From Bispira polyomma (lineage: Eukaryota), in the NCBI GenBank assembly GCA_965649765.1, contig OZ287755.1:19964001-20028000 (forward strand): a DNA stretch of 64,000 nt, given 5' to 3'. Position numbers and translations under genes: made by a program. Positions 6,487-52,250 of the stretch are shown piece by piece; position 1 is the first letter of the stretch; every line of letters starts with the position of its first letter. The notes under the pieces were generated by a model. That model was not told where the DNA came from, did not search any database, and worked only from the letters and a program-made list of their open reading frames with translations.

Positions 6487-6589
6487 GGCAGACAGAAGCT
6501 GGCCAGGTTCAACCCAAGGGAATTTGCCACGTTAATCATAGACATCCTTACAGACGTGAGGCGGAGACAGTGTCCTCACTACTCACTGG
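6487..6589 (+). CDS. GIT: GIT exon (SHD2): GRQKLARFNPREFATLIIDILTDVRRRQCPHYSL
   Basis: Near identical to GIT1 GRQKLARFNAREFATLIIDIL; tttcag acceptor, gtaagt donor. Confidence 0.95.
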
Positions 6590-7042
6590 GTAAGTGGGCA
6601 AAAACATCCTTACCCCAGTTTAGTAAATTAGTGTGTGGTATCCTACGAAGTCCTACCTTTACTGGTAAGGCCATCCTTACAGACGTGAGGTGGAGACAGT
6701 GTCCTCACTACTCACTGGGTAAGTGGGCAAAAACATCCTTACCCCAATTTAGTAAATTAGTGTGTGTTATTCTATGAAGTCCTACCTTTACTGGTGGGGC
6801 CATCCTTACAGGCATGAGGCGAAGGTAGTGTCCTCACTATTCACTGGGTAAGTGGGAAAAAACATCCTCACCCCAGTTTTGTTAATTAATGTGTGTTATC
6901 CTACAAAGTCCTACTTTTACTGGTAAGGCCATCCTTACAGACATGACGCGAAGGCAGTGTCCTCACTATTCACTGGGTAAGTGGGCTAAAACATCACTGG
7001 CCCCAGTTTAGTAAATTAGTGTGTGTTATCCTATGAAGTCCT
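6543..7042 (+). repeat. 129-bp tandem repeat (~4 copies) spanning the exon 3' end and 5' splice site
   Basis: CACTGG|GTAAGT donors at 6590, 6719, 6848 and 6977 (exact 129-bp period). Confidence 0.95.
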
Positions 7043-7043
7043 A

Positions 7044-7250
7044 AATCTTACTTAATGGGTTTGACAATATTTGATTTAACTGAGTTCTACTAAATGGGTT
7101 TGACAATATTTGACTTAACTGAGTTCTACTTAATGGGTTTGACAATATTTGACTTAACTGAATCTTACTTAATGGGTTTGACAATATTTGACTTAACTGA
7201 GTTCTACTAAATTTGTTTGCCAATATGGTTCTACTTTATGGGTTTGAACA
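7044..7250 (+). repeat. 39-bp minisatellite (~5 copies) derived from a Tc1/mariner-type MITE terminus
   Basis: Unit tgacttaactgagttctacttaatgggtttgacaatatt matches MITE ends at ~28508-28543 and ~43707-43742. Confidence 0.85.
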
Positions 7251-7267
7251 TCTTGTGTTATTTCCAG

Positions 7268-7372
7268 GGACGGGTACTTTGAACCTGTCTACCAAGAAGT
7301 CAATCAGTATTATCAGTGATGATGAGCCTCTCTATGATTCGGTGGCTTCTGACGAGGATTACGCGAGTATTG
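7268..7372 (+). CDS. GIT: GIT exon: GTGTLNLSTKKSISIISDDEPLYDSVASDEDYASI
   Basis: Conserved YDSVASDED motif of GIT proteins; phase 1-1, ag/gtaagt. Confidence 0.92.
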
Positions 7373-7937
7373 GTAAGTTACACTCTCTCTCTCTAAGGAT
7401 TAGTGGCCATTTTATGTCTTCAGTTTTGAAGCTAAGTGAAAACTCAAAAGTAAGGTCACTAAAAATTAGTGTCAGGACAGTAAAACTTTTAGTCCATTGG
7501 TCTCATATGCTGAGACCGGTGAACCAGTTTTTAAAAAAAAGATTTGCTTGAATTTTCATTATTTTATTGTTAATGGCAGTCAGGGTATTGTCAGCCCCCA
7601 TGTAAGACTGGTTGGTAGGAAGTTCAAAATATATACTGGAGAGAGATGATTGATTGTTGACTGAGATACCAAACTTTTAAAGTTGTAGTCATGGCAGATG
7701 GTAGTCTTATCGAGACATTTAAATTTACCATTAAAGTCCCTTGCCGTGGTTCAAATCCCACTGGTACAGTAATGTGAAAATGTATAATATCAGGTACTTG
7801 GCATAGGTTCTTAGATTACACCATTAAATCTGGCCGTTGTGTTTAATGAACATTTAAGTAAGGTCTTGCTCTCCCTACATGTTTTGGATATTAACTGGTG
7901 TACTGTAATAGTCTGTACTTGTATTTTATTGAGTTAC

Positions 7938-9262
7938 TAGTGGCCCAGTGGTTAGGGAGTTTGTCTGGGCCGGTATTCTCGAACGTATACTCAGCCTGAG
8001 TATGACATATACTCAGCTTATACTCAAAACATTCTGAGTTTATGTCATACTCAACAAAGTTGGTATTCTCGAACGTTTGAGTATGAGTATAATCCTGAGT
8101 ATATACTCAAATCCTTGAGTATGGCTATAGCATACTCAAGGCCTTGAGTATACGATAGAATATCAATAATAAGCATGCTATATTTTTACTTTTCATTTAT
8201 AGAATGAGATATACAAGTCAGAAACGATTAGAAAATGTTACTTTATTGTGTAATTTAATCACACTATTATTATTCAAGCCGTTTAACCCAAAACTCAAAG
8301 TCTACAATAGAGTACATAATATAGATAATTGTTAGCTAATTTTTATTTAATTAGGTGACTTGTTATTGTTTTTCCTAAACTATGTTGAAGATAGGTTAAT
8401 AATTTATACTTTTAATATAAAATATTTGCCTTTTATGGGTTGTGTGTGTAGGCTATATTTTACACCAATAATTTATATGAATGTTGCTTAAACAGTAAAT
8501 TAAGGTACATATTTTGTGGCTTGTGGGTAATGATATTGTCACTAAATTCTATTTTTGTTCCTTTAACATTCAAGAAACAACTCAATAGACTGCAACAAGT
8601 CATTGAAAGACAAACATTTTAACACTAGCATATCTATTTATTTCCTTCTTACATGTGTGCACAATACTTAGAAATAATAAACAAAAACAGAAATAAATTT
8701 TATGTAAAAATGATAAAAAACTTAATATTATACTGGAAAGACAAAATGTTAAAGGCTTACACAATTAATAATTTTTTTTAGATAAGAAATTACAAAACTG
8801 GTTGTACAATAACCTAATTTACTGCGAGTCTGTCAGTCAGTGACATCATACAGCTGAGTATATGCTCAAAATATGCCTGAGTTTATACTTAGTTGAGTTT
8901 ACATTCGAGAATACCAATTTGAGTATATACTCAGCTGAGTATAAACTCAAGGTTTGAGTTGAGTACATACTCAGATTTGAGTATACGTTCGAGAATACCA
9001 GCCCTGGTGATCAGAAGGTCCCCGGTTCAACTCCCAGTGGGGGGAGTTGGTCTAGTGATCGGAAAGGTCCCTGGTTCATGACTCCTGCTAATATCGCTAG
9101 GTACATTAATTTGGTGGGATACCATCCTTGGGCAAGATGTAGACGCACCATTACTAAGGACGGCCTAGAGTATGCTGTAGGACACATGATTAGTTAATTG
9201 ATTCGGTTGTGCTTTACAAGATGCTTCGCATCAATATAAGGCATGTTAAAATACAATACATT
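7938..9262 (+). mobile_element. CORE-like tRNA SINE split by the MITE (related copies ~47240-47575, ~49245-49490, partial ~51590-51845)
   Basis: A/B boxes, catccttgggcaag core and shared tail aagatgcttcgcatcaataaggcatgttaaaata. Confidence 0.75.
7968..9003. mobile_element. Non-autonomous DNA transposon (PIF/Harbinger-like MITE) with CTG TSD, inserted into a SINE
   Basis: 26-bp TIR GGCCGGTATTCTCGAACGTATACTCA (1 mismatch); CTG at 7965-7967 and 9004-9006; subterminal TGAGTA/TACTCA repeats. The empty site restores the SINE sequence seen at ~49275. Confidence 0.9.
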
Positions 9263-9287
9263 CACAATTTTATATCCTGGTCACTAG

Positions 9288-9397
9288 GAGACACTCAAAG
9301 CTTAAAGGACATGAAGTTAGACGGTCACCCGCCAATCCTTGTGAAAGAAAACGGAGAGTCAACACTGCTGAAAGCAGACCACACTAAAGGGGACGAG
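9288..9397 (+). CDS. GIT: GIT exon: GDTQSLKDMKLDGHPPILVKENGESTLLKADHTKGDE
   Basis: Open frame, ctag acceptor, gtgagt donor, phase 1 to 0 bridging the flanking exons. Confidence 0.8.
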
Positions 9398-10809
9398 GTG
9401 AGTGTGTGGGTATGTAGTAGTAGTAATATAGAGAGGCTTAGCAACTGTTGTCATGGCGATATACCATATTTTTTTTAGTAGAGGCTCTCCTTACTAATTA
9501 TAGACTATAGGTTATAAGTGTGTACTCAGATCCTATGTGACAGATTGCTATCACTTTTGGCATGAGTGTAACCCATGGGTAAAGTGACAAAAACATATAT
9601 TTCAAATTTTGAAAAATATTTAATATGGCCTCTGTAGGAGGTAAAGAAAGGCGAAAATTAGCCACTGGGTGCGTCATGTGTGCCCACTAGTCGAAATCTA
9701 AATCTACTGCTTTGTAGGCGCAAAATCTTCCCTGCAAAGGAACTCAGTGCGCTAAATGGAACAAAAAAATAGTCCAAAATCATAGTCGCGAGACTTTTAC
9801 ATTTTTGTTTATAGAACTGAATACCAACACTTTAGCAAGTTACATGTCTCCTGCAGGAAGTGTTGTGAGTATTATAATACTGACTTGTACTAGATCATTG
9901 TGTGATAATGCAGGTCAGCATGTAAGTGATATTGACCTATGGTTAAGAATCAAGATATTTTGTGGAGAGTTCAACTTATTTTGACAAACAACATATTATT
10001 TTTTAACAATAACTTACACCGCCACATTTATCATAGAAATTACAGTATATACAATACCCAAGGTGAAGGTCACAAAAACAGCAGCAGAAGCATCTGGCTG
10101 ATAAATTTTAATGTTTAATTATGTGTTTTTCATCTTTTTATATTTGTTTACTCTTTCAATTTCTGTTCTATTGCCATATTTACTTTTGTACAAAAACTGT
10201 TTAGTTTGGCAAGTAGTAAATGAAACAAGTTACCAACACATAGTTGATAGTTTTGACAATGTTTGTAGACAATGTTGTCAAGAAGATGTGGTCTTATGTG
10301 TTAGTTATTTCTTTAGTTAAAAACAATAGAAATTATTCTCTTTCAGAAAAATGACTCCCTTGTATTATGTCGAGCCTCTGTGTGTAACTGTCATATGATT
10401 TGTTACTAAATTGTTAGTTGAAATATATACTTTGATTCTACATTATTTTGAATAATCTTGTTTTTAAATAATTGTTCCATTCATTGTTTCTGCATACAAT
10501 TGTTTTGCAACTTAGTTTATATTACTTTCACCAGTGTAACAGCGTTTGTATCAAGTAGAGCATTGTTGTAAAACTTGATGTCATTAGATATCTTAACACG
10601 CACTAGTGCTAAACCCAGCCTTTTTGCTAAGATGTATTTTCTTTTTGGTGTATAACAATTTTTTTGCTTTAGATGTATTACAAAAGATATAAAAGACTTA
10701 GGGTCTTGTGTTTGAAAGAATTTATACTATAACTTTCCCACATGAACGAATCAAGAGGTTTTTAACCTACACTTGTGAGAGGCCAGCCATTATGAAGCAT
10801 GCACTTTAT

Positions 10810-11459
10810 GTGGTGGTTTCACTAACAAGTATGATCGGGAAAATGGGCTCGATTTAAGATCAGGGCATTTGGGGCGAAAAAATGATAAAATTTAATATTT
10901 TGGGTCAGAAAAGGAAAGTGTGGGGCGACTTTCCAGATCAAACTAATTGCGTCCCTTTTTGACTGGACACCGATCACGATCGACCTTGAAGTCCGTACTA
11001 AAACTGGCCGGGCCTCCCCGATCCTGCTAGGATCGAACTTATTGGCGATAGGATCTGACGTATTGACCATATCGGCAATAAATTCTGACAGATGTATACC
11101 CAGTCTCTCATGATCAAACCTCTAATAATCAAGGTCGGAAATGCTATGCCAACGCTATGTTGAAAATTCTTCCTCATCACCTCATTCGCCCACCATTTTT
11201 ATCCCCCGAATTTTAAGTTCGAACGGGCCAGTGTTAGGACAGGCCTGAAGTGAGATAAGACCTATCAGACAGAACGTAATGACAATGGGATGCTAGTCTG
11301 CCAGACTTTTGAAAAATATCAAACATGTTTTATATTCTTGCGGAAACCACTGCATTCACCCCCGTTTTCATCCTCTGAACTATACAAACTCAAATTATCT
11401 CACCCCAGACCTTAAAAATGGTATGGTTAGGGAGTAAATCAGGAATATGGAACCACCAC
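10810..11459. mobile_element. Harbinger-like MITE
   Basis: Short TIRs gtggtggttt.../...ggaaccaccac around a GC-richer interior. Confidence 0.45.
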
Positions 11460-11467
11460 TAGGCAAG

Positions 11468-11682
11468 CCCATGGTGGCCTAGTGGTTAATAGGTTAGCTT
11501 TACAATCACAGGCCTCTCACCAATGTGGGTTCAAAATCATGTTTAGTCCTTCATTTGGTAAAGTTTGTCACGTATTTGCCACAGGTCAGAGGTTCACACA
11601 GTGGTTTCAGCACTGGTTTCTTCCACCCTTAAATCTGGCCGTCGCAATATGACCTAAACTCTTAAAAGCCATGCAAATTCCA
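11468..11682 (+). mobile_element. tRNA SINE family B with V-domain-like core (copies ~7730-7850, 26875-27050 -, 34320-34545, 35010-35230 -, 37015-37290 -, 43775-44005, 50605-50860 -, 53185-53412, 59670-59810)
   Basis: Shared aaagtttgtcaggtacttgcc...actggtttcctccacc...aaatctggcc...gttgaaagcgacgttaaacccaaa core and tail. Confidence 0.8.
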
Positions 11683-11987
11683 ACTGCTACGTCACTGCAG
11701 CCCCAACTTTCACTTGGAATCATTTTTAATTCTAAATTTACATGAAAGAAACTTCTCCCTGAAAATATATAGATTACATCAATTTATTTATGTTCAAAAT
11801 GATCATTAAACAAAGTTTTCACATTTCAAACTTTGCTTTTGCTCAAAATTTGTTAGCTTGTCAAACTGCAGAGTGCAATTTAAGACACACGTGAAAACTA
11901 CTTCCAATTTCTTTAATTGTTGTAAGACTATTAGTCACAATTGGGTGTTAACTATATATTAGAATTAATTCCACCTTTCTTCCGTAG

Positions 11988-12026
11988 GAATCGTTAAGTG
12001 GCAGTTCATCCACATTCTCACTTGAG
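11988..12026 (+). CDS. GIT: Candidate 39-nt symmetric GIT micro-exon (ESLSGSSSTFSLE)
   Basis: Strong pyrimidine tract ccacctttcttccgtag, GAG|gtaaag donor, phase 0-0, no stop. Confidence 0.6.
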
Positions 12027-12644
12027 GTAAAGGACTTCTAACTTCTTTGCCTACCTTTTTTGTCCAAAATATATAGCATGGTGTATTTATAATAATTCTT
12101 GCCGTGAAAATCCAGCACAACATTTATTTATTTTATTATTTGTTAACTTTATTCTTTTCCTCTGTCCATCGATTGTTTATCACTAGAAAAAAAATTATAC
12201 AAAAACTTGTCTTTAGATAACCTTTCATATCCTTGACCTCTGTGTGTGGGTATTAAACCTAAACCTTTGTTTTGATATAGTGACATAGATTTATATTCTT
12301 TCGTGACATATTATAATGATAGTGTCTAATAAAACTAATGGACCTCACTACAAAAAACCACTATAGAAGCAGATAAATTAATTTTTTCAAAAAATTTACT
12401 GAAACAGATAGATTTAAATACAATTGTTTCACTAAAATTCTGAGTTAGGTTTGTGTCTAATTTTATAAAGGTGGTAGAGCAATAGGAAAAAACTACTCAA
12501 TATGATGTATGATATATTGATGATAAATTTGAAATTTATACTGAACCCCCAAAAATTTTGGGGGTCAAGACGTCTTTTAAAAATTAGGAATTCGCTCGTT
12601 GTCATCTTTCAAGCCTCCCCTTAAAATGAATCCCTGAAAGCTCA

Positions 12645-13345
12645 TCAGGAAATTATCCCATCAATTATTTCCCATCAGGAAAACTTCCCATCAGCTAATT
12701 TGAGGGGTAGGAAAATTTCCCATCAATTTTTTAAAATTAAGGTAAAATATCATTAGCATAATATTTTGCTTTACAAAAGTGTTTAACTTATGTTCATGAG
12801 AAGCTTACTTCAAAAAGGTTGTGTGATGTCATTATGGCCAATTGACAAACTTTTTCATTTCCATCCCTGAGCATAAATCAAATAACATTAGAATGTGTAT
12901 TGTGCTAATTGCCAAATGTGATCAATTTGAAGACTCTTTTATTCTGTGTTCCTGAGCACAAATCAAATGGTGTAACATTGGTCAAATGTAATTAACTTTA
13001 AGATTCTCTAATTTTTATTCCACAGTGAAAGATTTAAATGAAAAAGACATGTTTTCAATTTACTATATGTACTTTATATTATAAAATTATTATCATTGCA
13101 TTAAAAGTTGTTAAAAATTGCATATGTGATGCAAAAGTACTAACACTTGTAATGAATTCAAAATTACATAAAGTAATAGTGCTAAAACTTGTATAATGTA
13201 CCTAAAATATCATAAAAGTTATATCAAGTAATATTGTATAATTTAGTATGGAATAACTAATAAAATTTGACTATTGATGGGAAAATTTTCAACCCCTCAA
13301 TTCAGTTGATGGGAAAATATCCTGATGGAAAGTTTTCCATCATCC
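12645..13345. mobile_element. MITE with long subterminal inverted repeats of TTCCCATCA
   Basis: Left ttcccatca repeats plus ttgaggggt are mirrored by acccctcaa and tgatgggaa on the right; AT-rich centre. Confidence 0.7.
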
Positions 13346-13599
13346 TCTTAGAGTATCTACTTGTGGCAGCTTAGCCAAATGCATGACTTGTGTTCTAAAA
13401 TTGCATGCCCCTCTTATATATTTAATCATAAGTTTTACATCACACTAAATTTACAACGTTTAGCTTATGCAAGCTGTTCTGTCCCTTTTCATGAGTCCGT
13501 CGTCAAACAGCAAGAAATATCGCTAACTAGGGACAGATTATTCAGTCTAAAAAATGCCGAACTCAAGCCTTCAAGTCAGACTTTATTCATATCATACTG

Positions 13600-13792
13600 T
13601 AGACGTTGTTACCGTGGCTAACGTCAGTCTGCTGTCTTATAGCCGTGGCACGAGCCCACATAGAACTGGAGATTTCTAAAAACAGAAACCCCCCCCCCCA
13701 AAAAAAAAACAAACTTAAAAAGACATTTTCAAAAAGTTTTTAGAAATCTCCACGGCAATAAGACCGCAGACTGACGTTAGTAACCATGTCTA
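13600..13792. mobile_element. Short TAG...CTA element with a 9-bp TSD (Academ/AcademH-like MITE)
   Basis: TSD ATCATACTG at 13591-13599 and 13793-13801; long imperfect TIRs (ctaacgtcagtctgc.../...gcagactgacgttag). Confidence 0.75.
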
Positions 13793-13801
13793 ATCATACT
13801 G

Positions 13802-14025
13802 GGGCGGTATTTACAAAAGGTCTTGGGGCTTGACTTAGTCTGAAGCTTAAGATTTTATTCTTTGATTTTATTCCGAAAAGGTTAAGATATTGGTCTTAAT
13901 TCCAGTGACAGTAAGCAAAAAGATATTTGGTTATTGTTAATATTGGTCTCAACACTAACTGTAAGCACTTTTAAATATTTAAGGACATAAATATTAAGAC
14001 TACAACCTTTTGTGAATGTGGCCAC
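13802..14025. mobile_element. CTG-target Harbinger-like MITE family (also ~19947-20081, 27108-27350, 28793-29376, 38868-39073)
   Basis: GGGCxGTATT...AATACGGCCC-type termini, mostly flanked by CTG/CAG. Confidence 0.7.
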
Positions 14026-14381
14026 TGGTTTCCATAATCTACAGTTTAACCCCCTTAAAGTTGAACCTGAGTGGACTGAGAAGAATACAGTAAAACATCT
14101 ATTATCTAAACATGTAATTCCACTTATCAAAGTTCTACTTAAAGGGATTTTGACTGTATATATGTAGTAGTATATCCTGTAGTCTTGCAGTGAATTTTTG
14201 CCTCTTTAATTAACATATTTATCACATTTAATCATTTATTCAACCATAGATATTATTTCTTTGTTAATCTGTTTTCAGGTGTTTATTTCAATTTTTCAAA
14301 TATTTGTCTTTTTCTACACATTGTCTCATTTGTTACTATAAATATTTTGAATATTTTCATCAACTAAAATACTACCGGGAA

Positions 14382-14529
14382 CAGTAGAACCTCTATTATC
14401 TGATCTTCTATTATCCAAATATTTAATTTTATTACCTCATTTTCGGTCTCCCAAGTTTTGTGTTTTGCCTATTCTGTTATCCAAACAAAATTTTGCTCCA
14501 ACATGTTCGGATAATAGAAGTTCTACTGG
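14382..14529. mobile_element. Tc1/mariner(pogo)-type MITE CAGTAGAACCTCTATTATCC family (>10 copies, e.g. 35784-35979, 39345-39523, 46577-46687, 49014-49195); sister families CAGTxxAACCCCTTTAAGT (14041-14156, 27993-28542, 43568-43741, 46868-47024) and CAGTAGACTCTGTA (27638-27821, 43364-43535)
   Basis: CAG...CTG TIRs, mostly flanked by TA; 150-200 bp; dispersed through the window. Confidence 0.85.
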
Positions 14530-14839
14530 ATGGTACCGTTCACAACACAATGTGAGGATATGTCAGTGAGCCTGAGTTGCCTAAATACGCACTGACATTA
14601 TCATGTTTGTTTAAGGAGTTAAGTTTAGTGTGAGCCAAGTATAGTATAAGCTCTATTATCTAAAATTTTATCATCCAAATATTCTATTATATGAACTCAT
14701 TTTCAGTCTTTCCAATTATATATTCTCATTGTTTTATGAAGGAATGTTATTTATGAACCTTCTGTCATCCAAACAAAATATTGCTCTCCCAACATGTTCA
14801 GATAGATGAATTTCTGCTGCACATTGAGTGTTTTATATT

Positions 14840-15225
14840 GTGTGTTGTTATATCGTTTGGGTTGGTAGAAATAGATACTAAAAGTAACGTAAAGTAACTT
14901 CAATATCGGCCGATATCGGGACATAGAAAGTTGTGAAGAAACTGGAACATATCTGCAAAACGAAAGACCTGCCCGGAAAAAAAAAAGGCAAAAGGGAGTG
15001 AAAGTCGATAGATATGTTTACAAGTAAAAATGGACATAAATGGTGATCATTCATTATTTGAAAGGTATTAACCATAAAATACCATTAAAATTGTTGTATA
15101 AATGTTGTCCTTAGGTGTAATTTGTGTCTATTATGACATTGATGCATTTGTATTACACTTCGATATCGGCGCGTAAAACCCCGAACAATAAATATCAGTG
15201 ATATCGATAAACCATTTACCCACTA
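14840..15225. mobile_element. hAT-type MITE family TAGTGGGTAAAT...ATTTACCCACTA (~360 bp; copies 42885-43266, 48414-48770, 52272-52639, ~54764-55165, partial 54413-54545)
   Basis: Shared internal sequence (aacttcaatatcggccgatatcgggacatag) and TIRs; degenerate 8-bp TSD gtgtacag/gtggacac at the 52-kb copy. Confidence 0.8.
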
Positions 15226-15320
15226 CTGTGTATACACCGAGTATTTGGTCACTGCAGTCAGATGGTCCGATATAGTAGATTATAGCGTGTATTGAGTTAG
15301 TGTGTCCTATCTCCACACAG

Positions 15321-15470
15321 AGTATCTCGTCACTACAGTCAGATGGTCCGATGACCATAGACGACTACCTGGACGTCAAGCGGCTGCTGGCCGACTCTCA
15401 GGTCAGGAACCAGAAACTAGTGCAGAGCAACCAGGACCTCAAGCTGGAAATAGTGCAACTAAAGAATATG
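15321..15470 (+). CDS. GIT: GIT exon (coiled coil): SISSLQSDGPMTIDDYLDVKRLLADSQVRNQKLVQSNQDLKLEIVQLKNM
   Basis: Aligns with the GIT1 coiled coil SDGAVTLQEYLELKKALATSEAKVQQL; cacag/gtaggt; 150 nt, phase 0-0. Confidence 0.92.
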
Positions 15471-17250: not shown

Positions 17251-18078
17251 AGGGTAATTCTAAAGCTGTGACGATCAGTTGAAAGATCTATGTATCAGTT
17301 GACTGCGACAAATATTGCGATGCATGAAATCCAGGCTTTGCCACTCGATCATGTATATTTTACTCCTGTTGGTTGAATTTTAGTATGCAACCCAAAGCAC
17401 ATTGTTGCCAAGGAAAAATATAAATAATTAGATCGATAAAATTGTACCTTTGTATTCATGTTACACTTAAATTTGTAGTTATATGGTAGAAAAGATAAAA
17501 AAAAATAATTGAGTTTAGGTATATGTATCAGCACTGTATTTAGTTGAAATTGTTTTTTCGATGCATCAGTCAGTCTATTTGGGCAATAATCATTTGCAAA
17601 TAACATATATTCTGACTCTCAGATTTAATTAATACACACAGCTATTAAATATTATTTTGGTTTAACAGCGCTCTTGTTGCGTCAATTGTCATAACACGAA
17701 GTAGGAAATCAATGCCCTCCCCCCCCCCCCCCCCCCCACCTAAATGATATGATAGGTTATCAGCTAGTTCTGCTAAAGAATGTGGTAAGTCATCGAATAC
17801 AATGCTACTAAAGAATATGGTAAACCTTGGTTGTGTAGTGGTAACACACTTACCTTCCACCTTGGCAGCCATCCTGGATTCGAATCTGGGTTCTGAAGCA
17901 TGTATGTGAGAAAGTTGGCAGTGGACTTGAAGTTTGGCCATTTGCACCTTGAAAACCTTCACCAACTACCCTGTTCTTGTGCGACATCTTTAATGCAGTA
18001 AGTGTCGTTGTTTTGATTTTCTGTCGAATAACCTTACAAGAGTGGTGTGTTTTTGTTTTTTTTAAACTTTCACTGCAG

Positions 18079-20455: not shown

Positions 20456-20460
20456 CCTTT

Positions 20461-22626: not shown

Positions 22627-22799
22627 AGTGGCTCCAGTAGTAAAGACAGCTCCCAGACGTCCCTCAAGTCTCAGTCCCGGTTAGAACACCAGACAGACTC
22701 CACAGAGTCGGATTACGACAATGCTAACGCCCCCACTTTGGAGGAGGAGGACCCCTCTAGTGTGGACGCAGAGGCTCAGCTAGAGAACGCCAGGCTCAG
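22627..22799 (+). CDS. GIT: GIT exon: SGSSSKDSSQTSLKSQSRLEHQTDSTESDYDNANAPTLEEEDPSSVDAEAQLENARL
   Basis: Conserved SDYDN/SDYEN motif of GIT; cacag/gtaaga; phase 0 to 2. Confidence 0.92.
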
Positions 22800-23330
22800 G
22801 TAAGACAGAGACAGCTCGAGAACGCCAGGCTCAGGTAAGACAGAGGGACAGTTAGAGAATGCCAGGCTCAGGTAAGACAGAGGGACAGCTAGAGAACGTC
22901 AGGCTCAGGTAAGACTGAGGGACATCTAGAGAATGCCAGGCTCAGGTAAGACAGAGGAACAGCTAGAGAATGCCAGGCTTAGGTATGACAGAGGAACAGT
23001 TAGAGAATGCCTGACTTAGGTAAGACAGAGGGTCAGCTAGAGAATGCCAGGCTCAGGTAAGACAGAGGAACAGTTACAGAATGCCTGACTTAGGTAAGAC
23101 AGAGGGACAGCTAGAGAATGCCAGACTTAGGTAAGACAGAGGGACAGCTAGAGAATGCCAGACTTAGGTAAGACAAAGGAACAGTTAGAGAACGCCAGAC
23201 TTAGGTAAGACAGAGGGACAGCTAGAGAATGCCAGACTTAGGTAAGACAGAGGAACAGTTAGAGAACGCCAGACTTAGGTAAGACAGAGGAACAGTTAGA
23301 GAACGCCAGACTTAGGTAAGACAGAGGACA
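22777..23330 (+). repeat. 37-bp tandem repeat (15 copies) seeded on the exon donor
   Basis: cagctagagaatgccaggctcag|GTAAGAcagaggga; donors at 22800, 22835, then every 37 bp to 23316. Confidence 0.97.
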
Positions 23331-26293: not shown

Positions 26294-26309
26294 CCATTTT
26301 TTACCAAAT

Positions 26310-26340
<31 letters not shown>

Positions 26341-40729: not shown

Positions 40730-40945
40730 TTAATATAAATTTCTGTCCTAGAATTAAGCTGGGTACCCAAATATTTTACTTTACAATAATGAAAATACTT
40801 TTTAATAAAATTTCTGTGGACGAATTAGGCTAGTACCCAAATATTTTATTTCACAATGATAGGAATACTTTCTAATAAAATTTCAGCCCTAGAATTAAGC
40901 TTGTACCCAAACTATTCTCCTTTACAATATTGGGAATACTTTTCC
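40730..40945. repeat. ~70-bp tandem repeat (3 copies) in the putative DRG1 3' UTR
   Basis: ataaatttctgtcctagaattaagctgggtacccaaatatttt...aatactt occurs three times. Confidence 0.8.
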
Positions 40946-41178
40946 CATCCTTTTATCATATAGACACTGTAGTAGCCTGGTAACCTGTTGTTGATGAAAC
41001 TGTAACACAAGCTGGTACCCTAATTAATGGTCACCGTGTGGGAAGCTGGTAATCGTAGATAATAATACTGTAGGAATAGCCCTGACACAAATCTCCTAGA
41101 AGAGTCCCAAATAATCCTTGGTGCAATGTCATTGAATGTCTCCTGTGTGTATGATCTATCCAGTGTGTGTGTGCCCGT

Positions 41179-41185
41179 TTAGATC
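41179..41185 (-). CDS. DRG1: DRG1 exon 11, 7 coding nt giving C-terminus ...VKKI*
   Basis: tgctcttattcacag|G ATC TAA completes the phase-2 donor of exon 10; total CDS 1104 nt = 367 aa; AATAAA on the minus strand at 40115-40120 and 38052-38057. Confidence 0.65.
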
Positions 41186-44100
41186 CTGTGAATAAGAGCA
41201 GAAACTCTCCAGAACATCAGGTCCTTGAGTAGATGAAAAAAAAGAGTGGGGGAAGAGAGAGAGAGAAAAAAGCACAGGGTAAGTAAGCAGTAGGTTTGTT
41301 ATAGAGCAGACGTGCAACCAAGATCTAGAATACCACACAAATAGAGTAGATAAAACTACTAGACATACGATACTATATTACAACATATGGAGGGTGAGTA
41401 ACAAGTAGGTTTGTTATAGAGCAGATAACAAGCAAGGGAAGGTAGACTACATGGAGTAAGGAATTTAAATTCCACCACTGTATCTGAAATTCTCCACCTG
41501 GAAAATGGTGTGTTTCTGGAAGAATTGTGGGTAATATTTGCTGAAATTGAGATTTTTGTGACTATTTGGCCTCACTTACCTAAATTTCAGTTATTTTTCA
41601 CCAGGTGTTTATTATTTTGGCTTACATTTTAGGGGTAGCGAATTTCAGATACAGTTGCGAATTTTAGATTCCTTACTACAGTTATTAATATGACAACACT
41701 CTAGACTACAATAGAGTGTATAAAAAAAAAAATGTCAAGCAACTACTAGACATATGATACTATACTACAACATATAGTGGGTGAGTAAGCAGTATATAGG
41801 TATAAGCAGACAAGCAAAGTAAGATATAGAATATTACTCAAATAGAGTAGATAAAACTACTAGACATATGACACTATACTACCACATGTAGAGAGTGAGC
41901 AAGGCAAACAATAGGATATTAGGTTAGTATAAACAGGAAGGAAATAGTGTAGATGAAGGTAGATGAAGGTGACCATACTACATAGTACATAACCACTACA
42001 ATTAGGGCTGCAAAGAGTAATATAGTACTCGTTAAAGAATAGAGTAATAAACTATTCGGAGAACAAAATCAGGAAAAGACTTTCAAAAGGGTACTCTTTT
42101 CTTGTTTGAGATTAGCAGTATTGCAAATATTGTCATAAAATTAACTTCAAATAAGTCATTATTTGTAACTCGGTTGGGAAAATCATGCAAATTCTGGCTA
42201 TTTTACGCTTAAAACAGTACTCTTTAAAGAGTAGAGTAATGATGAAAGAGTATTCGGGTATAAAAATTACTACTGATTGCAGCCTTAACTACAATACACT
42301 ATAGTAATACACTAGATGGAAATAGAGTACACAAAACTACTACATATTATGTTTGTTTCGTTTCGCGAAACTCCACTTCCTGTAACAGGCTGCATTCGTT
42401 TGGGGAGATACTAGAATCAATACATTTTCGGTATCCCGGAATCCCAACGGTTTTGCATCGGCGAGATACCGACATACAAAAACTGGTACCGTCCCCCCCC
42501 CCCTACTAGATAGATAAAATAATACCACAATATACAGCCAGTTAGTAAGCATATAGAGCAAACAGACAAGAGAAGGTGTAGAATACTAGACTACATACAG
42601 TAACAGCCAGTGCACAAATAGAGCTGATAAAACTATTAGATGTATGCTACTGTCTGTGTCACCGATTTGGATTGGCCGAAAGCTTCCGTAAAAATCACCA
42701 TATACACATGGGCTGTTTTGTCCGTAGGATTGATGCCCAGGAGAAAATAGTTCCTCTAGTAACATATAAGAATCCACTAATTACAGTAGAATTCAAGTGA
42801 TTATTTAATTAGTCGTGCTTCTACGCTCCAAGAGTGGTATAAATTACCGTATATCCTGGGTGTGGATACTATAGTACATGGCTACTAGTGGGTAAATCGT
42901 TTAGATTGATGGACATTAGTGGGTAAATTGTTTGGCCTGGTGGAGATTGGTATGGAAAGTAAAATAACTTCAATATCGGCTGATATCGGGACATAGCAAG
43001 AAAGCTGTGACGAAACTGAAACGTATCTTCAAAACGAAAAAAATCAGGCCAAATGAAACTGAAAGTGAGAACCGGTAAATATGTTCACAAGTAAAATGAA
43101 TTTAAAATCGTTAATTAGTTAATATTCACTTTTAAAATATCAATAAAATATATTAATATAAATTTTGTCCCAAGGGGAAATATGTGTCATTTATGATATT
43201 GGTGTGCTCGCATTTGACATCGATATCGGCATGCAAAAAACCTAAACAATAACTATTGGTGATTTTGAGAAACTATTTAGCCACTAAAAGACCAGTAATA
43301 GCCACTACAATACACTAGACTACAGTCCAAAAGGAAAGATATAGGGCAATATACTAGAAGAGCTAGTAGACTCTGTATAAGTAGAACCAGTGTAAGTCGA
43401 ATTTAGGTATAATTGGAATCAGTTTTGAGGTCCCCAACATCAGAAAATGCTGTACTTTTGTAGGTATAAGTTGAACTTAGCCATAACTAGAACCAAACCC
43501 TGTGGATATTGGAGGTTCTAGTTATACAGAGTCTTAAATACAGTGGATAAAACTACATGTACTATACAGTTGAACCCCTTTAAGTGGAACCTCAAGGGAC
43601 CAGGAGAAATACCTCTACATAAGCAGGATTTCCACTTAACAGGGTAGATTTGAAAGGAAAAAGTCTTCATGTGACTTCTAATTCGTCTCCACATAACAGG
43701 GAAAATGACTTAACAGAGTTCTACTTAAAGGGGTTTCACTGTATATGACATTATGCAGTGCACAGAGGGCTAGTGGGGCCATTGTCATCTAGTGGTTAAA
43801 AGCACCTGCTTTAAAATCACTGGCCTTTCACCTCTGGGGATATAATCCCACAGATTCCTTCTTCAAGTGAGAAAGTTTGTCAGGTACTTGCCATAGGTCA
43901 GTGGTTTACAGTGCATCATCACTGGTTTTCCCCCACCACTAATCCTTGCCATTGCAATATGACCCAAGCTGTTGAAAGCGACATAAAACCCAAATTAATT
44001 CAAATACACAAACGGCCAATTATCAGTATATATATATATATTAGTGGAACCCCTTCAAGTTACCTCAAGGGACCAGGAGAAATACTTAAGCAGGATATCC

Positions 44101-45196
44101 ACTTAACAGGGTGGATTTTAATGGAAAATAAAAAAGGCAAAATGACTTAACAGAGTTTTAACAAAAGGGGTTAGACTGTATATGTATGTATACAAGGCAA
44201 CACAAGCAAAGAAAGATGTAGGCTACTCTATCCTAGAATAGAGAGGAATTAAATACAGTAGATGAAATGGTATAGTGCATTTTTACAACACAGCACCGTT
44301 TCAAATGCGCTTCCTCATGGACAGCCACTATGGGCACCGAGGCTTGCTTGAGGATGACCATTTATCAACGTCCCCAAGGATCTTCAATCTGCCATTGGAG
44401 ATATTACTCAGTGACAGAGGACCGCCATTTTAAGTGGTCATCCGAGTCACTAGGCAAACTTGTGTTCACATCTTGCCCAAGGATGTTAGCCTACCAAATG
44501 AAATTAGCGGCCAGAACCGGGAATAGAACCGGGGAACTTCTGATAATCAGAGTAACACCCTAACCACTAGTCATAGAAAACCTTTCCCAAATAAAATTAG
44601 ACATATATTACAAAGTTAACATTCATTCACTTGTAACCTGCACTACTAACTGTATAGAGTTGGTAATTCTAATTTATAATTTTGCCATATATATTTGAAA
44701 CGGAAAAAGCAGGGTGAAAAACTGGTTTAAGACGAGCTTCTTTTGTTTAAAAATACTTATCTTGAAGCCAAAACTCAATAGTTTCCTAAAATGGAACAAA
44801 CGTAACTGCAAAACTGGATCAAATAGCATTTGAAATACTCTGATAATATACTTATCTTGAGGCCAAAACACTGTAATTTCTTACATTTTACTACATGTAC
44901 TAAATTAAGGGGGTAGTGATATTTGGCAAATTTCAGAGTATTACAGTAAGAAATCTAAAATTCGCCACCTGGAAAATGTGTTTTTGGTAGAATTCTGGGT
45001 AATATTTGGTGAAATTAAGATTATTTTTGTAACCATTTGGCCTGAATTACCTAAATTCCAGTAATTTTACACCTAATTTTTATTGGTTTGGCCTGAGAAA
45101 TTTAGGGATGGTGAATTTCAGACACAGTGGCAAATTTTAGATTTCCTACTCTAATATTTGGTAAATTTTAGAGTAATATCCGTGCAAGTGACTTAC

Positions 45197-45292
45197 TTTT
45201 TGACTATCTGCACAACGTCTTCATCATTTAATACGTGTTCCCTGCCGACATTCTGAGGTTGATGTTTGACTGAGGAACCCCACACTAAGGCA
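45197..45292 (-). CDS. DRG1: DRG1 exon 10: ALVWGSSVKHQPQNVGREHVLNDEDVVQIVK
   Basis: TGS-domain end matching DRG1; ttcag acceptor; AA|GTAAGT donor overlapping an in-frame TAA. Confidence 0.95.
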
Positions 45293-45741
45293 CTGAATAC
45301 AGAATGTAATACATGTAAACTTATTACCAAAAAAAATGTCCCTTCTGTTACCGGCGTTCATTTCCTCTTGGGGTGTCTAAAGTGTAAAATAAGATTTCCA
45401 CTCAACAGAGAACATTTTAAAAGAAAAATGCTGTTATGTAACTACAAGTTTCCTTTCTACATAAAAAGAGAAATTGCCTATAAACAGACTTCTACTTAAA
45501 AGATGAATTTTTCCACAAATTAAATTTTTTTTTAGCTGGGACAAAAGATTTGCTGATTTACAATTTTTTAGGAAGTTAACTTTAATTAAATTTCAAGATT
45601 GGCTAATTTTTAGTTAATACATATATCGATACAAGTTTAACTTTTCACTATCAATTAATTTTCAATATCCCAATTCATTAGATAAAACAGCTGAAATAGT
45701 TTTTTAGTAACAATTTCCAGTTATACAGTATTACTACTTAC

Positions 45742-45864
45742 TACTTGAATTCCTTTAGGATGTTCTTGTGTATTTTCATACAAAAGTCCTCCACAGTAGT
45801 GGCGGTCGTCTTGAGGACGATGGGCGAATTATAGTCGGGCAGTTGTCCCTTGGGTTTGGTGTAA
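45742..45864 (-). CDS. DRG1: DRG1 exon 9: [40 protein letters not shown]
   Basis: DRG1 TGS domain; phase 2-2. Confidence 0.96.
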
Positions 45865-46711
45865 CTGAAAACACAACGGATGGAAAGAAATGAAAATTAA
45901 TTGAAATATGACATTTGTTATAGCGCACTTATACAACACAGGGTCATTTCAAATGCATTTCCTCATGGGGCAGCCACTATGAGCGGCGAGGCTTGCTTGA
46001 GGATGACCATTTATCAACGTCCTCAAGGATCTTTAATCTGCTACTGGAGATAGAATTCTGTGACAGAGTAGAGGATCGCCATTTTAAGTGGTCATCCAAG
46101 CCACTAGGCAAACTTGTCTTCAAATCTTGCATAAGGATGTTATTCCACCAAATGAAACTAGCGGTCGGTACTGGGAATAGAACCAGGACCTTCTCATCTT
46201 CAGACTGACACCCTAACCACTAGACCATAGGGGATCACATTTTCTTGACTACCTAAGTACTGTAATCCAGCAACTGCCATTTCAGTATTTGACATTTCAA
46301 AGTGTAAATACCCCTTATCATCATGACTGCCCTAGTACAGTCAACCAGCACCGGTAACTATAACTTCCCGAACTTAGAGAAGCTTAGGCTTGAGGATGAC
46401 ACCATTTCTCGAATGTTGTTGTCAAATCTATGTTATCAAAAGATGTACAAATTTGCTGTTTTCAATAGAATCTTTGTTTGCAATGGAGTTTAAACACAAG
46501 TCACCCGCCTGTGCAAAAGAGGACAAAACGCCAAGGTAGTGATTGCTGAAGACATTGACAATGTCTATTTATCTTCAGTACAACCTCTTTTATCTGAATA
46601 TTCAATTTTATGGAACATATTTCCAACTCTCCCAAATTTAAAATTTCCCTGCTCTCCCAACACATTCGGTAAATAGAGGTTCCACTGTATTGATTTATGA
46701 CAAATACCTAC

Positions 46712-46824
46712 ATGCGACATAACGAGAGGTAATCCCACATCTTTTCCAGGAGATCGTCAAAGTTCCATTTGTGATGTGCAGAGATGGGCACACAGTGTGG
46801 GATTTTGTAAATAATGTCCAATTC
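46712..46824 (-). CDS. DRG1: DRG1 exon 8: [37 protein letters not shown]
   Basis: Near identical to human DRG1; canonical sites. Confidence 0.97.
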
Positions 46825-48807
46825 CTACAAGAACAAGTAATACAGTAACATACACTGACTATACATATAGTGGAACCCTGTTAATTCGAATCTTAAGGGA
46901 CCGTAAAAGTGTGTTCTTTTTGACAGGGTAAATTTTAATTAGAAATATAGCAGTGGGACCTTAAAATAATTCGACTTAACAGGTAATTCTACTTATCAGA
47001 GTTCTACTTTAAGGGCTTTGACTGTAAATAAAAATTTTTGCGAGGAATTAGGCTTATGCTAGTGAAAACTATTTCTCACAGTGAAAATTTAAATTTATAT
47101 TGATTCTTTCCAGAAACAAAAGTGAAACTTATTTCTAGTGAATTCATGAAAATTTCAAATTAAAAATTTGCACTTCTAAAGTAAATACAGCCAAACCTGT
47201 TGATGTGTTAATTATACGTCTCTTTATTTCAGTAAAAAATGTGGTATCTGTGGCGTAGTGGTTAGAGTGTCGGACTTCGGATCTTAGAGATCTTAAGAGC
47301 CCAGGTTCGATTGTAGCTGCAGGCCTGGAGATTGTACCCTTGGACAAGGTGCTCCACACAAAGTAGTCACTCTCTACCAAGGTGTATAAATGGGTAACTG
47401 GCTGCTAATGGGTGTTATAGTCTTTGTTTGCTATATGTGGCAGCAAGGCTAGTATGCTTCCTCAGGAAGCTGAGACTGAACAATTGTTGACAAGTGAAAG
47501 AATCCAGGCTGGGGGTGTAAACTTTAAAGTCGGCTGAGACCTCAATGGAGGCGATATTAGACTATATACCTACACACATTTACATAAACGAAAACGTGAA
47601 CAGCTATTTTTAAATGTTACATCCATTTCAATAGAACTTGAACTGGTGAATTTAAATCTACTTTTAGATATTAGTTATAATCTCACTCCCATTCATAAGA
47701 GATACGGGGGCCATTTTTGGGAGAGAAGCTCAGACTCATTCCAAATGTGAAGGCTATAAATACATCCTTGTAGGTAGAATATAAACTTATTCTTGTAACA
47801 CTATTCACAGACTTAAAATATGCAGTCAGATTTTACATAAACTGCAGTTCCACCAACCTTTTTTTAATTATTAAATTTGGGGATCAATTTTTTTACTTTG
47901 GAGGCCATGCGCAAAATTAAAATGATTGTACACCAATGGCTAAGAACGGTGTATTTGAATTTGGATTTTTAACATCCACTCTAGTACCTTTAGTTAGGTT
48001 ATATTGGGATGGATAGTTGGAACACTGGAGAAAACAACGCTCACAGTTAATCAAGGTTCCACACTGAAACCAGCGTCCTACAGTAAGGAACTACCACTTT
48101 TCCCACATAGACGGGAGGCGAACTCGTGACCATTCGATCTCCAGACGTGACAGACCAGTGATTTCAAAGCTGACGCTTATAACCACTAGGCCACAGCGGC
48201 CCCTCTAAGAATGGTGTAAAAGTGAAGATAAAATATGTCTGCATAGAACTGACCCTTAGATCAGTAATGTGTCCGTAATATGTAAAATTTCTGCTTAAAT
48301 TCGCTGAAAAGTTTATTCTAGCCGAATATATGTGTACTTTAGATTTGCGCTTGATTTTGAGTTGAGAGGGAGAATTGTTGGGAGAATACGTCCAGATTTG
48401 TATAGAGCTCGTCTAGTGGGTAAATTATTTGGGCTGGTGGAGATCGATATCGAAAGTAAAATAAATTCAATACAGGCCTATATTGGGACATAGAAGTTGT
48501 GAAGAAACTAGAATGTATTTCCAAAGCAAAAAACTGCCCGAATGAAACAGGAACTGAGAAACGCTAAATATGTTTACAAGTAAAAATAGACTTAAAATGG
48601 TTATCATTCATAATTTAAAATGTATTAACCATAAAATATTATTAAAATGGTTGTATAAATGTTGTCCCAAGGTATAACATGTGTCATATATGATATTGAT
48701 GTGTTTGTAATTAGAACATAAAAGCCCAAACAATAAATATTGGCGATATCCATAAACAATTTACCTAGTAAGCTCCTGATAAGTGTACAATACAAACGAA
48801 GACCTAC

Positions 48808-48910
48808 CTCTATAGAAATCTGGTCAATCTTATTGAGTGCATAGATACAGGGGATGTAGACTCTGTTGCCTTCAATCACATCGATTAGATCTTCTGCAGT
48901 GGCATCATAC
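48808..48910 (-). CDS. DRG1: DRG1 exon 7: [34 protein letters not shown]
   Basis: G4 motif NKID; canonical sites. Confidence 0.97.
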
Positions 48911-49558
48911 CTGTGTGTAATTATAAAAAGCCCAATCTTTACTTTGTACAGTAGTCAACAAAGTAGCCAAATCAACACAATCAGGGTTAAGACAAACCCA
49001 GGCAATAAAAGCACAGTACTAGAACCGCTATTATCCAAGCTTCTGTTCTCCGTATATTCAATTTTATAAACATAGTTTCACACTTTTCATTTTTGAAATT
49101 GATTTTTACGAAAATGCCTCTTCTGTTTTATGAACACTCTATTTTCCGAACAAAATTTTGCTCTCCCAACATGTGCAGATAATAGAGATTCTGCTGTATT
49201 GCTCTGCCCTTTATGCTTAATGGGTTTTACTGGGAAATACTAGGGGGAATCCCATGGCCTAGTGGTGAGGGCATTGGTCTGGTGATCAGAAGGTCTCCAC
49301 TTCGACTCCTGTTTATGTGGCTAGGTTCACTGATGGGATAACATCCTTGGGGAAAAACGTGAACACACCATTGCCTACTGATGACGACCCAGGCCAGATG
49401 GTAGGACACATGATTTGCTGATTGATTCGGTTGTTTCGCTTTAGAAGATGCCTTACATCAATAAAGCGCATTAAAAATATACAATGCAATACAGTATGGC
49501 TTTCAGGAAAATAGCACAAACACTCACACCTACTTTTTATACACAACTACATTATCTG

Positions 49559-50393
49559 CAGGGTTCACGCTTACGACGTCCGAGTATCTAAAAACGCGGA
49601 ATTTTCGTTAGCGGACCCAAATTAAAACATAGAATGCGTCCATTAGGACCCAGACTTTATTTAAAAGAAAGAAATCACCATTTTCCCCCTTTTAATTTTT
49701 ATATATTTTGAAGTTTAATCACAGTTTCTAGCGATCTTTTTGTTTTGATTTGGTTCTTCCGGTTGTGGTGTTTTGAATGGGTAGTTTCTAAAACTCAAAA
49801 TTCTGTCAGGCCCTGGGTGATACGAAAATTGCCTAACTTTTTTTAACTCACATTTTAAGTACCTAAACTTTATTTTATATTATAATTATGCAACTTAATG
49901 GTCAATAAGGCTTCACAATTGACTTGTTTTATCCAATTACACCATTGAGACACAGCTTATTTTTGGGGGGGATTTTTTTTTAAGCTACAGCTTATTTGTT
50001 GGATGTTTAGTGTAATTCCAAGGGTAACATTTGTTTGTTTGGTGTTAAATTATATATTTGGATGTAGAAATATCAAGTTTGTAGTGTTTAACTTAAATTT
50101 TTATATCTAATGGCTAACATTGGTTTGTTTGATGTTAAATTATATATTTGGATGTAAAAGTATCAATATTAAATTTGTAGTGTTTGACTTAAATTTTCAT
50201 ATTCTATGTTATTATATTCTGTTGTTTGATAAGTGTAGAAATACAACAGTATATATTTTATTATTTTTAAATTATATTTGTCACAAAAATTGAAATTATC
50301 TATCGGATGCATGGAAACTACTACGGGACCCCACTTTTTATGAGAGGTGGGGTCCCCAAAACCCCACTTTAAAAAATCCTAGCGCCAACCCTG
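49559..50393. mobile_element. Non-autonomous hAT-like element with a 5-bp TSD
   Basis: CAGGGTT...AACCCTG termini; ATCTG directly flanks both sides. Confidence 0.7.
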
Positions 50394-50905
50394 ATCTGTT
50401 ATGTAATCAATAGATATAATTAAAAGTATAAGCTCAGTAATTTAACTTCAACAAATATAATTCCTTTTTTATTGTATGAAAAAAAGCTAAGCTGGTAATT
50501 TATGATGAAAATTTATATTGCCCAATCATTGTCTGTTTTACCCAGCATTGCCCACCTAGGAGTATTGCCCAGCTCGTAAAAACCTGACTTTAGATGATTG
50601 ATTATTTTGAGTTTAACGTCGCTTTCAACACTTTTGTATAGCTCATATGACGACGGTCTCTTTTACTGGTAGGGCAAAGGCAGTGCATACTCATTTGTTG
50701 AGAATGGCAGAATTGTAAAAAAAAAAAAGATTCTGCATTGTAAACAATTGGGCTTCGGAAAATAACTGCCAACTTTCCACATAAAGCTGCTGCTAAGATT
50801 TGAATCCATGACCTCAGAGGTGGGAGGCAAGTGCATTTAACACTACACCAGTGAGCCCCCTATGACCTTACAAAGAAAACCAATAGGTCCATACAATTGA
50901 ATACT

Positions 50906-51093
50906 ACATGGGCGTTCATAATACCGCTCGGGTCACAATACCGTCCGTTGCATTTTAGGGACTTTACCAACGGAAATTTAATGAATAAAAGCACAGAATA
51001 CTTTATTTTGTTTGAAATATATCTACGTTTTAAGTATTAAAATGTCCGTCAAATGGTATTGTGACCTGACTGGTATATTGTGACCGCCCGTGT
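50906..51093. mobile_element. Mariner-type MITE (second copy ~57010-57208)
   Basis: tacatgggcg...cgcccgtgta termini; shared ataccgtccgttgcatttt interior. Confidence 0.7.
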
Positions 51094-51432
51094 ACAATAT
51101 TTAAAGTTTGGATAATAGAGGTTCTAATGTGTTGATATTCCAGAACCTCAGTATAGATAGAGACTATTCCCCCACCCACCCACTAGTATCATTGTTTCAT
51201 GTAACTTCGGCGCACATATAACTTCGACGTAAATCACCATTAGCCACATTAAAAGTTCACGATTTCAAATTATTACTTGTTCAAAACACAAATAATTATT
51301 TGGCAATAAATCTCGTAACAATAAAGTCTTTGAATTGTCAATAATATTGTACATTACTGAGTGAAAACGTCACCTGCCGTACATAGCTTACTACGCCGAA
51401 GTTACATTGGAACACCATACCAGAAGCCTTAC

Positions 51433-51515
51433 TTGAGTGTGATATCAGCGTTGTGCATTCTGTATTCACCCAGTATAGTCTTGACCGTATCCAGGTCTAA
51501 CTCTGACTGAGTCAC
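51433..51515 (-). CDS. DRG1: DRG1 exon 6: [27 protein letters not shown]
   Basis: Matches DRG1; phase 0 to 2. Confidence 0.96.
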
Positions 51516-51856
51516 CTGAAACACAAAAATTATATACATTCAATCAGGGGAAAAAAAGACTTTGTTTCCTCGGTACTACCCACCAAGAGCGCTAGATGTA
51601 GAGCCGTCTCAATTGCAGCCCCTAGGTTATGGAATAGTCTCCCTCCCAATTAAGCTCAGATCACTAGGAACATTTTGGTGTTTAGAAGAAAACTTAAACC
51701 TATTTCTTCAAACTAGCTTACCCCCCATAGTTCCCTCCCTGTACACCCTCACACCTTGGCTACGTTTTTTTAACTTGGTTGCTTGATTCTGTTGTTGCGC
51801 TTTAGAAGGTGCCTCGCATTAATAAGGCGTGTTAAAAATGAATAATATTCACACAC

Positions 51857-51943
51857 CGTGGCAGTGAGGTTGATGCCTCCTTTATCTTTCCTCCTGAAAT
51901 AGATGTTTGGTGGAATCTTGTTTAGCCTTTTACCAAACCCTTC
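51857..51943 (-). repeat. Diverged copy of the 3' half of DRG1 exon 5 with its donor, 135 bp downstream
   Basis: Copy of the sequence encoding [29 protein letters not shown], followed by gtgtgt. Confidence 0.93.
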
Positions 51944-51991
51944 AATAACTATCCATTAATAACACATAGTATAAACATAATGTACACATAC

Positions 51992-52161
51992 CGTGGCAGT
52001 GAGGTTGATGCCTCCTTTATCTTTCCTCCTGAAGTAGATGTTAGGTGGAGTTTTGTTTAGCCGTATACCAAACCCTTCCAACTCGTGTTCTATCAGTTTT
52101 TTATGCTGTAAAGGTTTTAACACATCCAGCACCAGGAAGATGATGTTACACGTGCGGGCCA
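51992..52161 (-). CDS. DRG1: DRG1 exon 5: [57 protein letters not shown]
   Basis: Matches DRG1; ttttcag/gtatgt; phase 1 to 0. Confidence 0.97.
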
Positions 52162-52250
52162 CTGAAAAATATATGGGGACACTATATAACATGTGCGGGC
52201 CACTGAAAAAAAAACAGGAAAAAGATGTAACATGTGCAGGCCATTGAAAA
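52148..52250 (-). repeat. 41-bp tandem repeat (3 copies) spanning the DRG1 exon 5 acceptor
   Basis: ttttcag|tggcccgcac at 52161 and 52202; third copy at 52243 has AG changed to AA. Confidence 0.9.

What the first reader, a model, noticed from the sequence alone, without database searches (positions are those of the whole stretch)
6543..52250. Recurrent splice-site-seeded tandem arrays: six exon boundaries in two genes are amplified
Seen in sequence: unrelated tandem repeats (units of 129, 50, 37, 135, 81 and 41 bp) each contain the end of an exon plus its splice site and extend into the intron. They are at GIT donors 6590, 15471 and 22800, the GIT acceptor at 15320, and both the donor (51991) and acceptor (52162) of DRG1 exon 5. 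That is 6 of roughly 40 splice sites, although exon edges are a tiny fraction of the window. The exon-proximal copy always gives the conserved protein, and most distal copies lead to stops or frameshifts or have lost the AG. Inference: either a mutational process focused on exon-intron junctions (for example transcription/splicing-coupled breaks with slippage or rolling-circle repair), or tolerated/selected decoy splice-site arrays that expand introns and could tune splicing and NMD. Established context: tandem duplication of AGGT sites is a proposed route to intron gain.
Basis: partly seen in the sequence, partly recalled or inferred. Interest (0 to 1): 0.9.

Follow-up and report, generated by a model that had tools for sequence, protein, structure and literature searches.

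The report
Splice-donor "mirage" minisatellites in a worm
In this animal about three in ten exon ends have been copied, with their splice donor, head-to-tail into the next intron; this repeat type is already named ("mirages", from lancelets) and is probably harmless, but its strong bias to donors and its return at the same donors in a related species are not yet explained.

Summary
All six duplications are real, with the stated coordinates and periods. Short-read contigs reproduce the one array tested (129 bp). Two of the six (135 and 81 bp) are single partial copies, not arrays. The pattern extends beyond the window. In 30 myosin loci elsewhere in the genome, 15/46 donors (33%) sit in the first unit of a duplication, against 3.8% of intronic GT sites (8.6-fold, p=7e-11). 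Acceptors are not enriched (3/44). Eight uncertain kinase donors showed none. These are "mirage" minisatellites, known from lancelet genes and from human F7, where the most upstream donor is used. Nothing suggests function: first distal donors are in frame 6/19 times, as chance predicts, and no RNA run was available. One GIT donor each in tubeworm and scallop has the same layout. A relative with unalignable introns has donor-derived copies at the same three GIT donors, with different units matching its own junctions (p 0.02-0.2). Best reading: tolerated short tandem duplications, renewed from a conserved exon end and expanded by slippage. Donor-focused mutagenesis is not excluded. The scan has reported this on other pieces of this genome; the donor bias and cross-species recurrence were not in the notes I saw.

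The parts
6487..6589 (+). GIT exon (second SHD repeat); its last 47 nt seed the 129-bp array
   Evidence: PF08518
6543..7043 (+). 129-bp donor array, 3.9 units; distal donors after 6718 (in frame, open, +43 aa if used), 6847 and 6976 (in frame with stop); all keep GT
   Evidence: tiled by DNA contigs with 0-1 differences
15234..15352 (+). 81-bp acceptor duplication: one upstream partial copy (about 6 intron nt + 32 exon nt), AG lost
15321..15470 (+). GIT coiled-coil exon, duplicated at both edges
   Evidence: PF16559
15450..17250 (+). 50-bp donor array (20 exon + 30 intron nt), 36 units, 7-unit 349-bp higher-order repeat; all 35 distal copies keep GT, and each would give a stop if used
17760..17830 (+). 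two detached, degenerate copies of the 50-bp donor unit
   Evidence: seen in sequence
22627..22799 (+). GIT exon whose last ~31 nt seed the 37-bp array
22769..23328 (+). 37-bp donor array, 15 units, only ~6 intron nt per unit; 13 of 14 distal copies keep GTAAG, all 14 keep GT; all give stops if used
51842..52078 (-). 135-bp donor duplication of DRG1 exon 5 (87 exon + 15 intron nt alignable, one copy, GT kept, in frame with stop)
51992..52161 (-). DRG1 exon 5, duplicated at both edges
52133..52250 (-). 41-bp acceptor array, 2.9 units; nearer upstream copy keeps AG and scores above the real site (14.7 vs 11.6 bits), farther copy lost AG
44753..44870 (-). possible seventh case: 22-nt echo, 95 nt downstream, of a tentative last DRG1 micro-exon end (exon status unproven)

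Best explanation
These are mirage minisatellites, tolerated by-products of DNA-level tandem duplication. (1) Shown: a 26-135 bp stretch (up to ~300 bp at acceptors) with one end 15-90 nt inside an exon and the other 0-95 nt inside the intron is duplicated head-to-tail. The copies carry the exon-intron junction, not an exon-exon junction, so the template was not spliced mRNA. (2) Inferred: the first event is an ordinary slippage or break-repair duplication, as also seen in introns. (3) From the literature: it survives because the most upstream donor is used, so the protein is unchanged. (4) Shown: it then expands and contracts like any minisatellite (349-bp higher-order repeat; 11/15/23 copies in paralogues). 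(5) Inferred: because the first unit is held by selection on the exon and donor, it is a lasting template. Old copies next to it provide homology for fresh duplications, so such arrays last longer, grow larger and recur at the same donors, while intron-only repeats decay or are deleted. This renewal, with weaker tolerance of upstream acceptor copies, is my explanation for the donor excess.
For: Donor-anchored rate is 15/46 vs 3.8% background and vs 11/164 strong intronic pseudo-donors, so the GT motif alone is not the cause. Polarity is strict: exon-end 20-mers are echoed downstream in 18/66 and upstream in 0/55. Anchored arrays are longer than intron-only ones (median span/period 4.7 vs 1.7, p=5e-4). 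Frame of the first distal donor is random (6/19). Copy number changes faster than point mutation: 11, 23, 15 copies in paralogues differing at 2 of 391 flanking nt. A relative diverged at 52% of four-fold sites has donor-derived copies at the same GIT donors, with different units, and each array fits its own species' junction better. Published mirages do not disturb splicing (PMC3087553, PMC3902484). Human F7 uses only the most upstream of identical donors (PMC1557585).
Against: The excess is greatest among the youngest-looking copies (14-fold at >=92% identity). Array starts are dense in the last 100 exon nt (3.4/kb) but not just inside the intron (0.3-1.4/kb), which also fits a raised birth rate. 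One acceptor array has 15 upstream copies with intact AG, so acceptor copies can be tolerated. Cross-species sharing rests on 3 sites (p 0.024-0.2 depending on the cut-off), and the intron parts of the two species' units do not align significantly. No RNA data were available for this animal.
Confidence: 0.58

Rival explanations
1. Donor-focused mutagenesis: breaks, nicks, pausing or R-loops near the 5' splice site (or at the exon's nucleosome edge) raise the birth rate of short duplications at exon 3' ends, with some donors recurrent hot spots.
For: Enrichment is at donors only. It is 14-fold in the youngest identity class. Array starts cluster in the last 100 exon nt. The same donors carry different units in two species. 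It is seen in tubeworm and scallop GIT too.
Against: Anchored pairs look young partly because one copy is conserved. There is no direct mechanistic evidence.
Confidence: 0.24
2. Selected decoy splice sites that tune splicing, intron length or NMD.
For: GT is kept in 17/18 nearest copies found from the exon side only. Many copies score as well as the real donor. The first 129-bp copy would add 43 aa in frame. Arrays sit at the same donors in a relative.
Against: GT retention is expected at 90-97% identity. Frame is random. Units and copy numbers are not conserved between species or paralogues. The arrays are absent from Lineus GIT and two other DRG1 genes. Published mirages are mostly silent.
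Confidence: 0.08
3. Intermediates of intron gain or intron sliding (duplication of proto-splice sites).
For: Proposed for lancelet globin mirages (PMC3087553). The 37-bp units contain repeated AG|GT motifs.
Against: Exon borders are the same in the relative's 12 GIT exons, and the DRG1 exons map one-to-one in two other animals. No new intron or shifted border was found.
Confidence: 0.05
4. Assembly artefact or chance overlap in a repeat-rich genome.
For: About 17-21% of intron DNA lies in near-tandem repeats.
Against: Contigs of three DNA runs reproduce the 129-bp array with 0-1 differences at single-copy depth. Copies carry distinct substitutions. The independent sample gives p=7e-11. The exact length of the 50-bp array was not checked.
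Confidence: 0.01

Closest known systems
'Mirage' minisatellites of amphioxus (Adh3, globins BflGb6 and BflGb9, troponin C, PGBD5; PMC3087553, PMC3902484)
   Same: Tandem units of tens to ~160 bp span an exon-intron boundary, at donors or acceptors. The exon-side unit is the working one, many copies keep GT/AG, and copy number is unstable.
   Different: Reported gene by gene in lancelets, with mechanism stated as unclear. Here the host is a probable annelid, the frequency is measured against a background, a donor bias is seen, and a relative has arrays at the same donors.
Human donor-spanning VNTRs (F7 intron 7, CBS intron 13, 6-16, lamin B2, PDGF; PMC1557585)
   Same: The first monomer holds the exon end and the real donor, followed by identical pseudo-donors. 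The most upstream donor dominates.
   Different: Single-gene reports in human, against roughly 30% of sampled donors here. In 6-16 and CBS one or two pseudo-donors are also used; use is untested here.
Short microhomology-mediated tandem duplications as seeds of tandem repeats (PMC13167724, PMC8355091; abstracts, plus a term search in PMC13167724)
   Same: Short, head-to-tail, largely neutral and purged from coding DNA. Short junction homology is visible in some units (for example 6 nt in the 37-bp array).
   Different: PMC13167724 does not mention introns, exons or splice sites. Microhomology was not measurable in most arrays here.

Membership tests
mirage minisatellite | Head-to-tail repeat whose unit spans an exon-intron boundary | tested here: met
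   six window sites, 18 myosin sites
mirage minisatellite | Exon-side unit supplies the coding exon; other copies lie in the intron | tested here: met
   exon-side unit matches the relative's protein; strict polarity 18/66 vs 0/55
mirage minisatellite | Minisatellite-size unit with many copies keeping GT/AG | tested here: met
   units 26-135 bp (to 295 at an acceptor); GT kept 17/18
mirage minisatellite | Length instability | tested here: met
   11/23/15 copies in three paralogues; higher-order repeat. Allelic or somatic variation not seen in the one array tested
mirage minisatellite | Normal splicing not disturbed | not testable with these tools
   no RNA run listed for this organism; all laid runs were genomic
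intron gain by tandem duplication | A new intron or shifted exon border formed from the duplicate | tested here: not met
   exon borders shared with the relative and other animals
microhomology-mediated tandem duplication | Microhomology at the duplication junction | tested here: inconclusive
   clear in a few units, obscured by decay in most

The most novel reading that the evidence does not exclude
A splicing- or transcription-coupled mutational process duplicates DNA preferentially at 5' splice sites, hits the same donors again in separate lineages, and is widespread in spiralians. This would be a mutation bias set by gene structure, and would give thousands of natural tests of donor choice.
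Probability: 0.22. Interest if true: 0.8.

Novelty: new member of a known kind. Interest (0 to 1): 0.45.

Why it matters
The origin of mirages has been left open since they were described in single lancelet genes. A genome where roughly 30% of sampled donors but under 10% of acceptors carry them makes the question testable with statistics (mutation bias versus tolerance and renewal). It also offers a large natural test of the 'most upstream donor wins' rule outside mammals. In practice, these copies mislead gene prediction and homology mapping: they were scored as extra exons by tblastn.

Tried and rejected
The genome-wide repeat scan could not be run. The 30 myosin loci are the independent sample. 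The 30 kinase loci were mostly intronless copies: 0/8 uncertain donors and no stop-codon end had an echo. Adding those donors gives 15/54 (28%). No RNA run was available. Rejected: the GT motif as cause (pseudo-donors 11/164); breakpoint clustering at the donor (p=0.23); selection on reading frame (6/19); typical AG loss; simple shielding of the intron start (array starts at +60 to +300 run at only 0.3/kb). Homology of intron parts between species was not significant. Two GIT proteins had no gene on record, and the downstream walk in the relative landed on a repeat, so its DRG1 was not seen. About ten myosin splice sites were too uncertain to score and were left out. Undetected exons inflate the background, which makes the test conservative.
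Full report
Setting. The window is C8:19,964,001-20,028,000 of a 1.035-Gb assembly in 75 contigs. It holds the 3' part of GIT on + (12 exons, 5920-26293; Pfam GIT_SHD, GIT_CC and GIT1_C) and DRG1 on - (start 56589). Among eight named GIT genes or proteins, the tubeworm Ridgeia scored best or tied for several exons. That fits an annelid but does not prove it.

Observation. The 129-, 50-, 37- and 41-bp cases are arrays of 3.9, 36, 15 and 2.9 units. The 135- and 81-bp cases are single partial copies. The 50-bp array has a 7-unit, 349-bp higher-order repeat. Contigs of three genomic runs (one study, at most two samples) tile the 129-bp array with 0-1 differences at single-copy depth, so that array is not an assembly error.

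More than chance? In the window, 4/20 donors and 2/20 acceptors lie in the terminal unit of a near-tandem duplication, against 3.5-4.2% of intronic GT/AG sites (p=0.004). Since the window was chosen for the pattern, I tested 30 myosin-head loci from other places, picked by HMM score. Donors: 15/46 (33%, 95% interval 20-48%) against 3.8%, 8.6-fold, p=7e-11. Acceptors: 3/44 (7%) against 5.3%, not significant. Donor versus acceptor: p=0.003. Strong intronic pseudo-donors show 11/164. An exon-only test agrees: the last 20 exon nt are echoed downstream in 18/66 and upstream in 0/55, the first 20 nt upstream in 4/64, and intronic 20-mers in 3.1%. Eight uncertain kinase donors had no echo.

Anatomy. 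Donor units are 26-135 bp, with 15-87 exon nt and 0-95 intron nt. They carry the exon-intron junction, so spliced mRNA was not the template. Intron-side breakpoints are not clustered at the donor beyond chance (7/19 within 10 nt, 5.2 expected). Array starts run at 3.4/kb in the last 100 exon nt and 0.3-1.4/kb in the intron. Anchored arrays are longer than intron-only repeats (4.7 vs 1.7 periods, p=5e-4). One myosin segment present on three chromosomes, with 2 differences in 391 flanking nt, has 11, 23 and 15 distal copies of its 53-bp donor unit.

Function. GT is kept in 17/18 nearest copies, as expected at this identity. The first distal donor is in frame in 6/19 cases. In the window only the first 129-bp copy gives an open in-frame product (+43 aa); the other donor copies give stops, which is unremarkable for intron sequence. 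AG is usually kept in acceptor copies. No RNA run was available, so use of the copies is untested.

Other species. The same layout occurs at one GIT donor in Ridgeia (35 bp) and one in the scallop Ylistrum (43 bp). It is absent from Lineus GIT (0/13 donors) and from two other DRG1 genes with shorter introns. A close relative (ENA ERZ22147071) has the same 12 exons, 52% difference at 93 four-fold sites, and largely unalignable introns. It carries donor-derived copies after the same three GIT exons: a 40-bp array after the coiled-coil exon, degenerate ~31-bp copies at the donor of the 37-bp array, and a faint copy after the SHD exon. It also has echoes at two other donors. The chance of this overlap is 0.024-0.2 depending on the cut-off. 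Units differ in length and breakpoints, each array fits its own species' junction better, and the intron parts do not align significantly. The window's copies are too close to their own exon to be untouched relics of the common ancestor. They were either renewed from the exon end or born again at the same site.

Known kinds. Ebner et al. 2010 (PMC3087553) describe this structure as 'mirages' in lancelet Adh3 and globin genes: length-unstable, not disturbing splicing by RT-PCR, mechanism unclear. Further lancelet cases are in PMC3902484. Borensztajn et al. 2006 (PMC1557585) list human donor-spanning minisatellites and show that the most upstream donor is chosen in F7. My searches of the held library found no genome-scale count or donor-versus-acceptor comparison, but that library is incomplete. 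Earlier notes of this scan report the same class on other pieces of this genome.

Mechanism. Shown: DNA-type tandem duplication across the junction, strict polarity, later expansion, donor excess. From the literature: silence of downstream donors. Inferred: the birth mechanism and the reason for the excess. I favour tolerance plus renewal from a conserved exon end (0.58) over donor-focused mutagenesis (0.24), selected decoys (0.08) and intron-gain intermediates (0.05).

Verdict. Real, widespread in this genome, and of a known kind in a new lineage. The donor bias and the cross-species recurrence are the parts worth following. Interest 0.45.

Noticed in passing
L005, L006, L007 (C11, C8, C13): One myosin gene segment is present on three chromosomes at ~99.5% identity, with 11, 23 and 15 distal copies of a 53-bp donor repeat.
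   Followed up: partly
L036-L060: About 17 near-identical intronless kinase ORFs (411-419 aa open frames) on many chromosomes, probably carried by a mobile element.
   Followed up: no
window 22-396 and 1023-1372: Tyrosine-recombinase-like fragment (weak Pfam hit, E 0.01) with nearby repeats, resembling the end of a DIRS-type element.
   Followed up: partly
window 2657-3190: Single-exon 177-aa RING finger ORF (PF00097, E 4e-5).
   Followed up: partly
window 60780-61900, minus strand: Broken ORF that by eye resembles a Harbinger/IS5-type transposase; no Pfam hit for the piece tested.
   Followed up: partly
window 44753-44870, minus strand: Tentative last DRG1 micro-exon with a 22-nt echo 95 nt downstream; an alternative acceptor may lie near 41227.
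   Followed up: partly
L011:2310-2415 and 3121-3184 (gene orientation): Myosin P-loop exon present twice, possibly as mutually exclusive exons.
   Followed up: no
L063 (Ridgeia GIT locus): Introns full of 33-38 bp minisatellites, one of them donor-seeded.
   Followed up: partly
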